Source of the DNA: Mytilus edulis
Lineage: Eukaryota
Direction: 5' to 3'
DNA: 64,000 nucleotides
Assembly: GCF_963676685.1 (NCBI RefSeq)
Contig: NC_092347.1
Coordinates: 34,348,001 to 34,412,000, forward strand
Positions 41,437 to 43,562 of this stretch are shown here, in pieces. A program made the translations under genes and the position numbers. Within the stretch, counting starts at the first letter, position 1; the number at the start of each line of letters is the position of its first letter. Below the pieces are notes generated by a model. It was given only the letters and a program-made list of their open reading frames with translations, made no database searches and was not told the origin of the DNA.

Positions 41437-43562
41437 CACGGGGGGGGGGGGGGGGGTAACTTCGATATTTTTTTGGTAGGGGTGTGCCATTTTTGCCAAA
41501 AAAAACGTACCCATTTTAATATAACATTCACTGAAATTCAGTACCTATAGTTATATAAATATTTAAGAAAGAATGACCTATACTTATATATAATATTTAA
41601 AATATGACCTCAAAACGTTATTGAAGATCAAATCAGGAGACAAATTTCCGGGGTTTATTTGGGAACTTATTTGAAAGGTGAACTTTCAAATGAAATGATT
41701 TAATTTAATATAATAATTGACCATTAATAATGTAAGATTCTCAATAGCATATTTATATATGATATGTAGATCCAGGAACATATGTGTTAGATATACTGTT
41801 CCCAGGTTTACATCCCAGCTCCTTTGTTCTAACAGGGGTGATCTGAGTCGGATCACCCCAACCAGATCACCCCAGTTTAAGTTTCTTTGTTATGCATGCT
41901 TTCCTTTGTTCTGTAACATTTTGGCGGGAATGTCAAATCCAGTATAAAACTTAAAACTAAATATACGGTGAAGACTATCTATCAAAATTCACGTAGAAAA
42001 AATCCAATATATATGCTGGGATTCGAACTCAAGACCTTAAGCATATCAAGCCACGACACATACCACTTCACCAGGACGACTGGATACGAACTAATAGAAA
42101 TTTAACATACTTAAAGGAAGCAAGATATTTTTATAACTGGGGCGAGTTGGCAGACCTTTACTCAGTGGTGTTTAAACCCTTTTCGTTTAATAAATGAGTT
42201 GTCAGACTGATTGTTCAATTTGATTTTGCACTTTTTAAAAGTTGGGGGAGTCGGTTACAAGAATGGGGCGATTTTTTAATAAAGTGGCGATATAGTGTGG
42301 GCCGATTGGCCACTGGGCGAGTTGACATTGTTTGATATCTAATCATCGTGCTAGGGGGTCATAAAGGGTATACATCATATAGTAATATTTAAAGTATGTT
42401 ATAATGGTTGTGTGGCGTTCTAAACTAGATTTTATGAATTGTAAATGGTTTTTCGTCTAATCTAAATCAGCTGGGATGTAAAATAGTTATCCCATTCGGA
42501 CTTGGTGTGTCAGTGTAAGACTGATCACCCTCTGGCCTCTGGCCATCGGGATGATCTTACACTGACACCCGGCGTCCTTATGGGATAACTATTAATTACA
42601 TCCCAGCTCCTTTGTTCTAACAGGGGTGATCTGAGTCGGATCACCCCAACCAGATCACCCCAGTTTAAGTTTCTTTGTTATGCATGCTTTCCTTTGTTCT
42701 GTAACATTTTGGCGGGAATGTCAAATCCAGTATAAAACTTATAACTAAATATACGGTGAAGACTATCTATCAAAATTCACGTAGAAAAAATCCAATATAT
42801 ATGCTGGGATTCGAACTCAAGACCTTAAGCATATCAAGCCACGACACATACCACTTCACCAGGACGACTGGATACGAACTAATAGAAATTTAACATACTT
42901 AAAGGAAGCAAGATATTTTTATAACTGGGGCGAGTTGGCAGACCTTTACTCAGTGGTGTTTAAACCCTTTTCGTTTAATAAATGAGTTGTCAGACTGATT
43001 GTTCAATTTGATTTTGCACTTTTTAAAAGTTGGGGGAGTCGGTTACAAGAATGGGGCGATTTTTTAATAAAGTGGCGATATAGTGTGGGCCGATTGGCCA
43101 CTGGGCGAGTTGACATTGTTTGATATCTAATCATCGTGCTAGGGGGTCATAAAGGGTATACATCATATAGTAATATTTAAAGTATGTTATAATGGTTGTG
43201 TGGCGTTCTAAACTAGATTTTATGAATTGTAAATGGTTTTTCGTCTTATCTAAATCAGCTGGGATGTAAAATAGTTATCCCATTCGGACTTGGTGTGTCA
43301 GTGTAAGACTGATCACCCTCTGGCCTCTGGCCATCGGGATGATCTTACACTGACACACCGCGTCCTTATGGGATAACTATTAAAGATCATACCCCAAATC
43401 AATATACAGTTATAATCAATATACAGTTATCAAACGTAAATGCATTTTAATATAGGATGTCATTAAAAAGGAGGGTCATTCTTATATAAAATCTCGCAAA
43501 ATTATGACCCATATTTTTGGCACATCCCCGTATACCCAATAAGAGGAAGTTACCCCTCCGTG
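41437..43562. mobile_element. hAT-type MITE with 8-bp TSD hosting nested insertions
   Basis: CATAAAAC|CACGG(G)nGTAACTT ... AAGTTACCCCTCCGTG|CATAAAAC. Confidence 0.8.
41808..43383. mobile_element. Head-to-tail dimer of a 788-bp non-coding element (tyrosine-recombinase Crypton/DIRS-like, or rolling-circle type)
   Basis: Units 41808-42595 and 42596-43383 differ at about five sites; nested inverted repeats TTACATCCCAGCT/AGCTGGGATGTAA and AATAGTTATCCCA/TGGGATAACTATT; no TSD. Confidence 0.8.

What the first reader, a model, noticed from the sequence alone, without database searches (positions are those of the whole stretch)
41808..43383. 788-bp TSD-less element that carries an inverted copy of its own end-to-end junction, caught as a head-to-tail dimer
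Seen: each unit begins with A=TTACATCCCAGCT and ends with B=TGGGATAACTATT(AA). Internally, A' and B' sit side by side (AGCTGGGATGTAA-AATAGTTATCCCA, 42469-42494). This internal site is the reverse complement of the B-AA-A junction actually present between the two units (42581-42608), minus 2 bp. B'..B also closes a ~112-bp hairpin. The empty site can be reconstructed: the dimer splits the 7-bp duplication GT^AGATC of an older mini-element, so it inserted between T and A with no TSD. Established: an internal region complementary to both joined termini is the ICR architecture of DIRS elements, and TSD-less insertion via circular intermediates is characteristic of tyrosine-recombinase elements (DIRS, Crypton). 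Inference: a non-autonomous element moving through a circular intermediate, with the dimer preserving the circle junction. TGGGAT-spacer-ATCCCA looks like a recombinase site, and internal-versus-junction recombination could invert segments.
Basis: partly seen in the sequence, partly recalled or inferred. Interest (0 to 1): 0.8.

Follow-up and report, generated by a model that had tools for sequence, protein, structure and literature searches.

The report
Rolling-circle-type transposon caught as tandem dimer
The two 788-base units are real copies of a common non-coding jumping element whose ends are built like those of Helitron2-type rolling-circle transposons, an already described design, so it is a tidy example and not a new kind of element.

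Summary
Window 41808-42595 and 42596-43383 are two 788-bp units that differ at 4 positions. The unit is a dispersed repeat of this 1.37-Gb genome: 496 exact 5' ends and 724 internal sites. Its ends are always the same. Three paralogous empty sites show precise insertion between T and A with no target duplication.

The "internal copy of the joined ends" is real. The first 13 nt pair with 662-674, directly followed by a 112-nt hairpin that ends 2 nt before the 3' end. This is the published Helitron2/Helentron/HINE terminal design: a 5' asymmetric terminal inverted repeat (ATIR), a 3' ATIR immediately upstream of the 3' hairpin, a 5' hairpin, no duplication, tandem copies and circular intermediates. 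It is not a DIRS or Crypton signature.

Head-to-tail joints with exactly the same AA junction occur 14 times in 13 arrays. The 3' flank is strongly biased to W-K-A, which the element's own 5' TTA satisfies.

Three points count against full membership:
- No RepHel partner with these ends was found.
- The target is not T-rich.
- The hairpin is unusually long.

Verdict: a new member of a known kind. Long-read proof of this particular dimer is still missing.

The parts
41808..42595 (+). unit 1 of the 788-bp non-autonomous element
   Evidence: full-length match 1-788, the same ends as 28 other loci
42596..43383 (+). unit 2, 4 differences from unit 1
41808..41820 (+). 5' terminal inverted repeat (5' ATIR, 'A'), 0 nt from the end; second copy at 42596-42608
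   Evidence: (I7, I10), 24: pairs with 42469-42481
41831..41877 (+). 5' hairpin (unit positions 24-70); second copy at 42619-42665
   Evidence: -13.6 kcal/mol, z -4.6, 0 of 200 shuffles as good; I13/I24
42469..42481 (+). 3' subterminal inverted repeat (3' ATIR, 'A prime'); second copy at 43257-43269
42482..42593 (+). 3' terminal hairpin (B prime ... B), directly after the 3' ATIR and ending 2 nt before the 3' end; second copy at 43270-43381
   Evidence: I4/I2
42581..42608 (+). head-to-tail joint B-AA-A (complete 3' end joined to complete 5' end)
   Evidence: 14 genome hits, control 0; 6 of 6 exact-arm joints have exactly AA
41560..41807 (.). left host flank, part of another repeat family; the insertion point follows T 41807
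43384..43386 (+). AGA, the host triplet 3' of the insertion (fits the W-K-A preference)
43384..43560 (.). right host flank of the same host repeat

Best explanation
The 788-bp unit is a non-autonomous rolling-circle transposon of the Helitron2/Helentron type (HINE-like). A RepHel (HUH nuclease plus helicase) protein encoded elsewhere would move it as single-stranded DNA.

Shown:
- The ends are fixed.
- Insertion is precise and makes no target duplication.
- The 13-nt 5' end pairs with a subterminal repeat that lies directly upstream of a long 3' hairpin. In the single strand this places the 5' and 3' ends side by side on the internal 26-nt site.
- The host triplet 3' of the element is W-K-A.
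- Exact end-to-end tandem joints recur.

Inferred:
- The nuclease cuts 5' of a W-K-A triplet at both boundaries: N^TTA at the 5' end, and TTAA^WKA at the 3' end and in the target.
- The joint TTAA^TTAC in a circle or a dimer therefore acts as both a start site and a stop site.
- Dimers arise in one of two ways. Termination fails during rolling-circle copying, or a copy is placed exactly in front of a resident copy whose own 5' TTA mimics the target.
- The two units of the window dimer were copied from one another, or homogenised, long after the original insertion.
For: Family and ends:
- 41 scored full-length copies at 93-100% identity, out of 1488 first-look candidates.
- 496 exact 22-nt 5' ends and 724 internal 26-mers with at most 1 mismatch. 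Controls gave 0.
- 28 of 28 other loci hold single full-length copies with identical ends.
- by my reading of the printed flanks, the left and right flanks share no repeat.

Insertion:
- 3 of 3 paralogous empty sites are uninterrupted at GGT|AGATC.
- in the right flank, +1 is A/T in 32 of 34, +2 is G/T in 32 of 34 (p = 1e-8) and +3 is A in 31 of 34 (p = 2e-12). The left flank at -1 is unbiased.

Structure:
- folds of the single strand (z = -15, -7.2 and -4.6).
- the termini are better conserved than the interior between subfamilies, at 3-7% against 12-18% divergence.

Tandem arrays:
- 14 joints in 13 arrays, both full and truncated.
- all 6 exact-arm joints carry exactly AA.

Possible partners in the genome:
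- 150 Helitron_like_N matches were scored, many in open frames of 2000-3200 aa.
- 3 of 3 tested frames have Helitron_like_N plus PIF1 helicase.

Published definitions:
- PMC3627910, PMC4067079, PMC5148889 and PMC7492417 describe the same design, tandem copies and circular intermediates.
Against: - No autonomous partner was found. Six RepHel families were fetched (6 of 150 Rep places) and none has these ends, at up to 2 mismatches in the 13-mers or by blastn.
- On contigs C1 and C2, 0 of 26 Rep hits lie within 15 kb of an exact end signature. I compared the lists by eye.
- No other family shares the exact end signals with different neighbouring sequence (1 and 0 hits; from its coordinates, the single hit looks like a shortened family copy).
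- The target is N^WKA. It is not the TT or T-rich target published for Helentrons and Helitron2.
- The 3' ATIR lies 114 nt from the 3' end, against a published 20-60 nt.
- The 5' hairpin does not include the ATIR.
- There is no microsatellite and there are no central repeats, unlike the oyster HINEs.
- No compensatory changes are available (38 of 71 pairs are invariant and the rest show single-sided changes).
- The window dimer shares 29 derived changes and has only 4 private ones, while monomers have a median of 14. A dimer made at insertion explains this only if gene conversion followed.
Confidence: 0.68

Rival explanations
1. A non-autonomous element moved by a tyrosine recombinase (Crypton-like or DIRS-like) through a double-stranded circle. 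The internal site would act as an ICR or recombination site.
For: There is no target duplication. The internal site is complementary to the joined ends. The hexamers TGGGAT/ATCCCA occur four times in inverted pairs. No RepHel partner was found.
Against: No sequence is shared between the target (GGT|AGA) and the circle joint (TAA|TTA). The left flank shows no preference at all, and only the 3' side is constrained. This asymmetry fits single-strand nicking, not a crossover core. The element has no inverted terminal repeats or split direct repeats of the DIRS kind. No inversion between the internal site and the joint was seen in 5 full dimers. No long copy with these ends exists on C1 and C2 apart from one carrying nested insertions. 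I did not search the genome for tyrosine recombinase genes.
Confidence: 0.07
2. A single-strand transposon of another HUH lineage, or of an undescribed one. One possibility is IS200/IS605-like logic read on the minus strand: insertion 3' of T-M-W, next to a hairpin-bearing left end. It would resemble Helitron2 only by convergence.
For: The target constraint is one-sided and 3 nt long, and it abuts the hairpin end. There are subterminal hairpins at both ends and no target duplication. No RepHel partner was found.
Against: The ATIR-plus-hairpin geometry is the published defining feature of Helitron2. The genome is full of intact RepHel genes. From recall, not tested here: no Y1-type transposon family is known in animals.
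Confidence: 0.15
3. Two abutting MITEs, or an assembly or haplotype duplication of a single unit.
For: No long read or contig spans the dimer. The two units are nearly identical.
Against: 28 of 28 loci carry the whole unit with the same ends. Solo hairpins are essentially absent: 8 hits against 724. Three empty sites lack the whole unit pair. The two units differ at 4 positions. Equally precise dimers exist at other loci.
Confidence: 0.03

Closest known systems
Helitron2 group of Helitrons (Bao & Jurka 2013, PMC3627910; passages read)
   Same: The 5' ATIR is short (8-15 bp; here 13) and lies 0-2 bp from the 5' end (here 0). The 3' ATIR is subterminal and immediately upstream of the 3' hairpin. 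There are hairpins at both ends, the 5' nucleotide is T, there is no target duplication, and non-autonomous copies are about 650-800 bp. That paper already proposes that pairing of the 5' and 3' ATIRs sets the end of rolling-circle copying.
   Different: The 3' ATIR is 114 nt from the end, not 20-30, because the hairpin is 112 nt long and runs to 2 nt from the terminus. The 5' hairpin does not contain the ATIR. The target is N^WKA, not TTTT^T/C. No RepHel partner was identified.
Helentron-associated HINEs: DINE-1, mite and mosquito HINEs, oyster Cg_HINE and Pearl (PMC4067079, PMC7492417; passages read)
   Same: They are non-coding and have subterminal inverted repeats plus a 3' palindrome. They make no target duplication and are abundant in bivalves. 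Partners are often not identifiable; the oyster study also could not link its HINEs to autonomous Helentrons.
   Different: There is no microsatellite and no central satellite-like repeats. There is no oligo-T insertion preference. The 3' hairpin is much longer (39-nt arms against 5-10 bp palindromes).
Fusarium FoHeli non-canonical Helitrons (PMC5148889; passages read)
   Same: They have ATIRs and joined-end (circle) products. Tandem copies are explained there either by insertion at the 5' end of a resident copy or by rolling-circle copying.
   Different: They are fungal and autonomous, and insert between TNAT and T. Circles were shown there by PCR. Here nothing was shown experimentally.
DIRS1-type retrotransposons (internal complementary region); recalled, not read here
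   Same: An internal stretch is complementary to both outer ends, which suggests closure of a single-stranded circle.
   Different: No inverted terminal repeats of hundreds of bp, no reverse transcriptase or tyrosine recombinase partner, and a 112-nt local hairpin in place of a distant ICR.

Membership tests
Helitron2/Helentron-type (HINE-like) rolling-circle element | No target site duplication, precise ends | tested here: met
   3 of 3 empty sites; 29 insertions printed; no flanking repeat by my reading of the flanks
Helitron2/Helentron-type (HINE-like) rolling-circle element | 5' ATIR of 8-15 bp, 0-2 bp from the 5' end, pairing with a subterminal 3' ATIR | tested here: met
   13 nt at position 1-13 pairs with 662-674
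Helitron2/Helentron-type (HINE-like) rolling-circle element | 3' ATIR immediately upstream of a 3' hairpin or palindrome | tested here: met
   0-nt gap. The distance to the 3' end is 114 nt, outside the published 20-60 nt.
Helitron2/Helentron-type (HINE-like) rolling-circle element | 5' hairpin involving part or all of the 5' ATIR | tested here: inconclusive
   a significant 5' hairpin at 24-70, but it does not include the ATIR
Helitron2/Helentron-type (HINE-like) rolling-circle element | Insertion in TT or T-rich target | tested here: not met
   the target is N^[A/T][G/T]A; GGT^AGA
Helitron2/Helentron-type (HINE-like) rolling-circle element | Autonomous RepHel element sharing the termini | tested here: not met
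   6 families fetched of 150 Rep places; 0 of 26 Rep hits on C1 and C2 near exact ends. The search was incomplete.
Helitron2/Helentron-type (HINE-like) rolling-circle element | Tandem head-to-tail copies, some truncated | tested here: met
Crypton / DIRS (tyrosine recombinase elements) | Tyrosine recombinase (and, for DIRS, reverse transcriptase) encoded by long copies with the same ends | tested here: inconclusive
   No long copy with exact ends on C1 and C2, except one with a nested reverse-transcriptase-bearing insertion inside a normal unit. No genome-wide search for the recombinase was made.
Crypton / DIRS (tyrosine recombinase elements) | Short sequence shared by target and element ends (crossover core) or DIRS-type terminal repeats | tested here: not met
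MITE of a DDE (cut-and-paste) superfamily | Terminal inverted repeats at both extreme ends and a target site duplication | tested here: not met
   the ends share only TTA and a displaced ATCCCA; there is no duplication

The most novel reading that the evidence does not exclude
The family may belong to an undescribed lineage of duplication-free single-strand transposons, or to an unusual Helitron2 offshoot.

In this reading the internal 26-nt site works as a built-in splint. It base-pairs with both termini and holds the 5' and 3' ends side by side for circle closure.

The target triplet (W-K-A) mimics the element's own 5' TTA. Resident copies then become preferred targets and grow into exact head-to-tail arrays in situ.

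Two results fit this reading. No RepHel partner has these ends. In 4 arrays the sister units are far younger than their insertion.
Probability: 0.13. Interest if true: 0.55.

Novelty: new member of a known kind. Interest (0 to 1): 0.3.

Why it matters
The locus is a clean natural example of the Helitron2-type end design. The 3' hairpin runs to the terminus, so the internal site is a perfect complement of the circle joint. It also comes with three empty sites, a sharply one-sided target triplet and 13 exact tandem arrays.

This makes two open points about non-canonical Helitrons testable with short oligonucleotides:
- what the asymmetric inverted repeat does
- how the stop site is recognised

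It also shows how whole-element tandem copies, which can seed satellite DNA in bivalves, may start. It does not reveal a new class of element.

Tried and rejected
Partner search:
- I then fetched six RepHel families in smaller requests. None showed similarity to the unit's ends.
- Looking for ATIR-like inverted repeats around three of these genes gave only noise.
- I compared, by eye, the listed places of exact 5' ends and internal sites with the Rep places on C1 and C2. Only one long candidate emerged, of 6.4 kb. It is a normal unit interrupted by two nested insertions, one with a reverse transcriptase.
- The 1515-bp variant unit in the C7 array carries 958 bp of non-coding filler.
- "Not-this-base" patterns beside the end signals found no second family.

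Other tests that gave nothing useful:
- Covariation: the copies are too alike to be informative.
- tRNA and Rfam: nothing was found in the unit, although the minus strand of 42015-42090 looks tRNA-like.
- Reads: only short contigs and 150-nt reads were available and no piece spans the dimer. The empty-form joint 41807>43384 was seen in 3 of 4 runs, but it may come from the paralogues.
- One search was badly designed. A gap of 0 matches the reverse complement of every internal site (521 hits). One search repeated it with a gap of 1-20.
- C2:28973832/28973940 looked like a joint without AA. It is a truncated copy with a fold-back inverted duplication centred on the hairpin.

Literature and earlier notes:
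- A full-text search for three 13-mers of the element found only unrelated primers.
- I did not ask for supplementary files. Tables of HINE and Helentron end sequences in PMC4067079 and PMC7492417 could contain a family with these ends.
- Repbase and Dfam could not be searched, so "not yet described as a family" is untested.
- Earlier scan notes held nothing on this element.

Full report
WHAT IS THERE. Window 41808-42595 and 42596-43383 are two head-to-tail units of 788 bp. They differ at 4 positions. Each unit begins TTACATCCCAGCT (A) and ends TGGGATAACTATTAA (B plus AA). At 42469-42494, and again at 43257-43282, the complements of A and B lie side by side. This 26-mer is the exact reverse complement of the joint B-AA-A at 42581-42608, without the AA. 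B' and B close a hairpin at 42482-42593, with 39-nt arms that are 85% complementary and a 34-nt loop.

IT IS A MOBILE FAMILY WITH FIXED ENDS.
- The unit is dispersed through the window's own genome, which has 1.37 Gb in 2368 contigs.
- One search returned 41 full-length matches at 93-100% identity from 1488 first-look candidates.
- The exact 22-nt 5' end occurs 496 times.
- The internal 26-mer occurs 724 times with at most 1 mismatch. Reversed-pattern controls gave 0.
- All 28 other loci fetched hold one complete unit with the same first and last bases.
- Main-family copies differ from their consensus at a median of 14 positions.
- Between subfamilies, the ends (3-7% divergence) are better conserved than positions 281-480 (12-18%).
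- The hairpin half does not exist as a separate element. Only 8 hits have its arm without A' in front. At least one of these is the opposite arm of a normal copy; the other 7 were not examined.

INSERTION IS PRECISE AND LEAVES NO DUPLICATION.
- The flanks of the dimer belong to another repeat family.
- Three paralogous copies read ...CTGTTCCCAGGT|AGATCATACCCC... without interruption. The dimer therefore entered between T 41807 and A 43384, with nothing duplicated or lost.
- Across 34 non-redundant right flanks, the three host bases after the element are [A/T] (32 of 34), [G/T] (32 of 34, p = 1e-8) and A (31 of 34, p = 2e-12).
- The 37 left flanks show no preference at -1. T at -9 (23 of 37) and A at -8 (21 of 37) are weak enrichments that I do not interpret.
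- The element's own first three bases, TTA, fit the W-K-A rule.

STRUCTURE OF THE SINGLE STRAND.
- Folded as DNA, the monomer pairs its first 13 nt with 662-674. Positions 675-786 form the hairpin (-108 kcal/mol, z = -7.2).
- The two helices abut. [quoted passage not shown]
- The joint region of the dimer forms one continuous helix with an AA bulge (-52 kcal/mol, z = -15).
- A second hairpin lies at unit positions 24-70 (z = -4.6).
- No compensatory changes exist to test these pairings. Of 71 pairs, 38 are invariant and the rest change on one side only.

WHAT KIND OF ELEMENT. The design is published.
- Bao and Jurka define Helitron2 by three features: a short ATIR 0-2 bp from the 5' end, a 3' ATIR that is subterminal and immediately upstream of the 3' hairpin, and hairpins at both ends. 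Such elements start with T and make no duplication. The authors propose that 5'/3' ATIR pairing marks the end of rolling-circle copying (PMC3627910, passages).
- Helentrons and their non-autonomous HINEs, including bivalve Pearl and Cg_HINE elements, share subterminal inverted repeats plus a 3' palindrome (PMC4067079; PMC7492417).
- Joined-end circles and tandem copies are reported for such elements (PMC5148889).
- The genome holds many candidate helpers. One search scored 150 Helitron_like_N matches, many in open frames of 2000-3200 aa. Three of three tested frames carry Helitron_like_N plus PIF1 helicase, with OTU or Herpes_teg_N protease-like domains.

The "ICR-like" site is therefore the Helitron2 ATIR-plus-hairpin arrangement. 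Here it is extreme because the hairpin stem runs to 2 nt from the terminus.

WHAT DOES NOT FIT.
- No partner was found. Six RepHel families (6 of 150 Rep places) lack these ends.
- On C1 and C2, none of 26 Rep hits lies within 15 kb of an exact end signature (lists, compared by eye).
- The only long copy on those contigs is a normal unit with nested insertions.
- No other family shares the end signals.
- The target is not T-rich.
- The 3' ATIR is 114 nt from the end, against a published 20-60 nt.
- The 5' hairpin does not contain the ATIR.
- There is no microsatellite and there are no central repeats.

For these reasons I hold the Helitron2-type reading at about two in three. The oyster study likewise could not link its HINEs to autonomous elements.

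THE DIMER.
- The joint B-AA-A occurs 14 times with at most 2 mismatches (control 0). These fall in 13 arrays, or 12 if two similar arrays 30 kb apart on C7 are one duplication.
- With exact 12-nt arms and any spacer of 1-20 nt, all 6 true joints have exactly AA. The other 5 hits are internal sites with a lengthened T run or a local duplication.
- The arrays include 5 full dimers, one trimer made of a 788-bp unit and a 1515-bp variant, and several with truncated members.
- In 4 dimers the two units are 99.1-99.9% identical but 5-9% from other loci. In one dimer (L037) they are only 87.6% alike.
- The window pair shares 29 changes from the family consensus and differs at 4.
- So most dimers were copied from one template, or homogenised by gene conversion, well after the lineage diverged. 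At least two arrays join unlike units.
- As a rough inference, about a thousand insertions spread over some 10^8 W-K-A sites would hit a resident 5' end far less than once. Twelve or more exact joints therefore need a mechanism.
- Three mechanisms are possible: failure to stop during rolling-circle copying, insertion directed to the 5' TTA of a resident copy, or both. I cannot separate these.

WHY NOT A TYROSINE RECOMBINASE. Target and joint share no core (GGT|AGA against TAA|TTA). Only the 3' side of the target is constrained. There are no DIRS-type terminal repeats. No inversion between the internal site and the joint was seen in 5 full dimers. I did not search for recombinase genes, so this rival is lowered but not excluded.

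WHAT REMAINS UNSHOWN.
- The dimer at this locus has no independent read support. Twenty rows in 11 studies hold parts of the stretch, but the four runs laid gave only short pieces.
- The empty joint 41807>43384 appears in 3 of 4 runs (2 reads in X24, 1 contig each in X15 and X1, none in X11). It may stem from the paralogues.
- Circles, the enzyme and the cleavage sites are all inferred.
- Repbase and Dfam could not be consulted, and I did not ask for the papers' supplements.

VERDICT. The finding is real and carefully observed, and its anatomy is right. The family assignment needs correcting: this is a new member of the known Helitron2/Helentron-like non-autonomous elements. It has a neat splint-like end geometry, a distinctive N^WKA target and recurrent exact tandem arrays. 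Interest is modest.

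Noticed in passing
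window 41438-41807 and 43384-43560: The dimer sits inside another repeat family, with 380-472 first-look candidates. Its ends look like G-run/C-run inverted repeats (GGGGGGGTAACTTC / GAAGTTACCCC). It is probably a MITE-like element.
   Followed up: partly
window 43397-43430: A perfect 17-bp tandem duplication (AATCAATATACAGTTAT x2) is private to this copy of the host repeat. All three paralogues have one copy.
   Followed up: yes
window 42015-42090, minus strand (and 42803-42878): The unit contains a tRNA-like stretch with a B-box-like GAGTTCGAATCCC; the box consensus is recalled. ARAGORN and Rfam find nothing. It may be a captured SINE or tRNA fragment. Its ATCCCAGC also occurs in the element's 5' end.
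   Followed up: partly
L054 (G000:C2:28972900-28974900), about 617-1194: A truncated copy (unit 357-786) is followed by its own inverted copy back to position 533. The result is a fold-back palindrome centred on the 3' hairpin loop.
   Followed up: yes
L055 (G000:C2:86350050-86356750): One copy is split by two nested insertions. One of 1.7 kb shows a 5-bp overlap of unit positions 28-32. The other, of 3.7 kb, carries an RVT_1 reverse transcriptase frame.
   Followed up: yes
L033/L034 (G000:C7:32438472-32443011): A three-member array joins a standard 788-bp unit to a 1515-bp variant in which about 230 bp are replaced by 958 bp of non-coding sequence holding its own ~165-nt inverted repeat.
   Followed up: partly
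L045, L047, L057 (RepHel loci on C1, C14, C12): Intact frames of 2494-2687 aa combine Helitron_like_N, PIF1 helicase, DUF6570 and an N-terminal OTU or Herpes_teg_N protease-like domain. Several families have many copies with identical Rep scores, suggesting recent activity.
   Followed up: partly
left flanks of 37 copies, positions -9 and -8: There is weak enrichment of T at -9 (23 of 37) and A at -8 (21 of 37) upstream of the insertion point. It may be chance given 24 positions examined.
   Followed up: no
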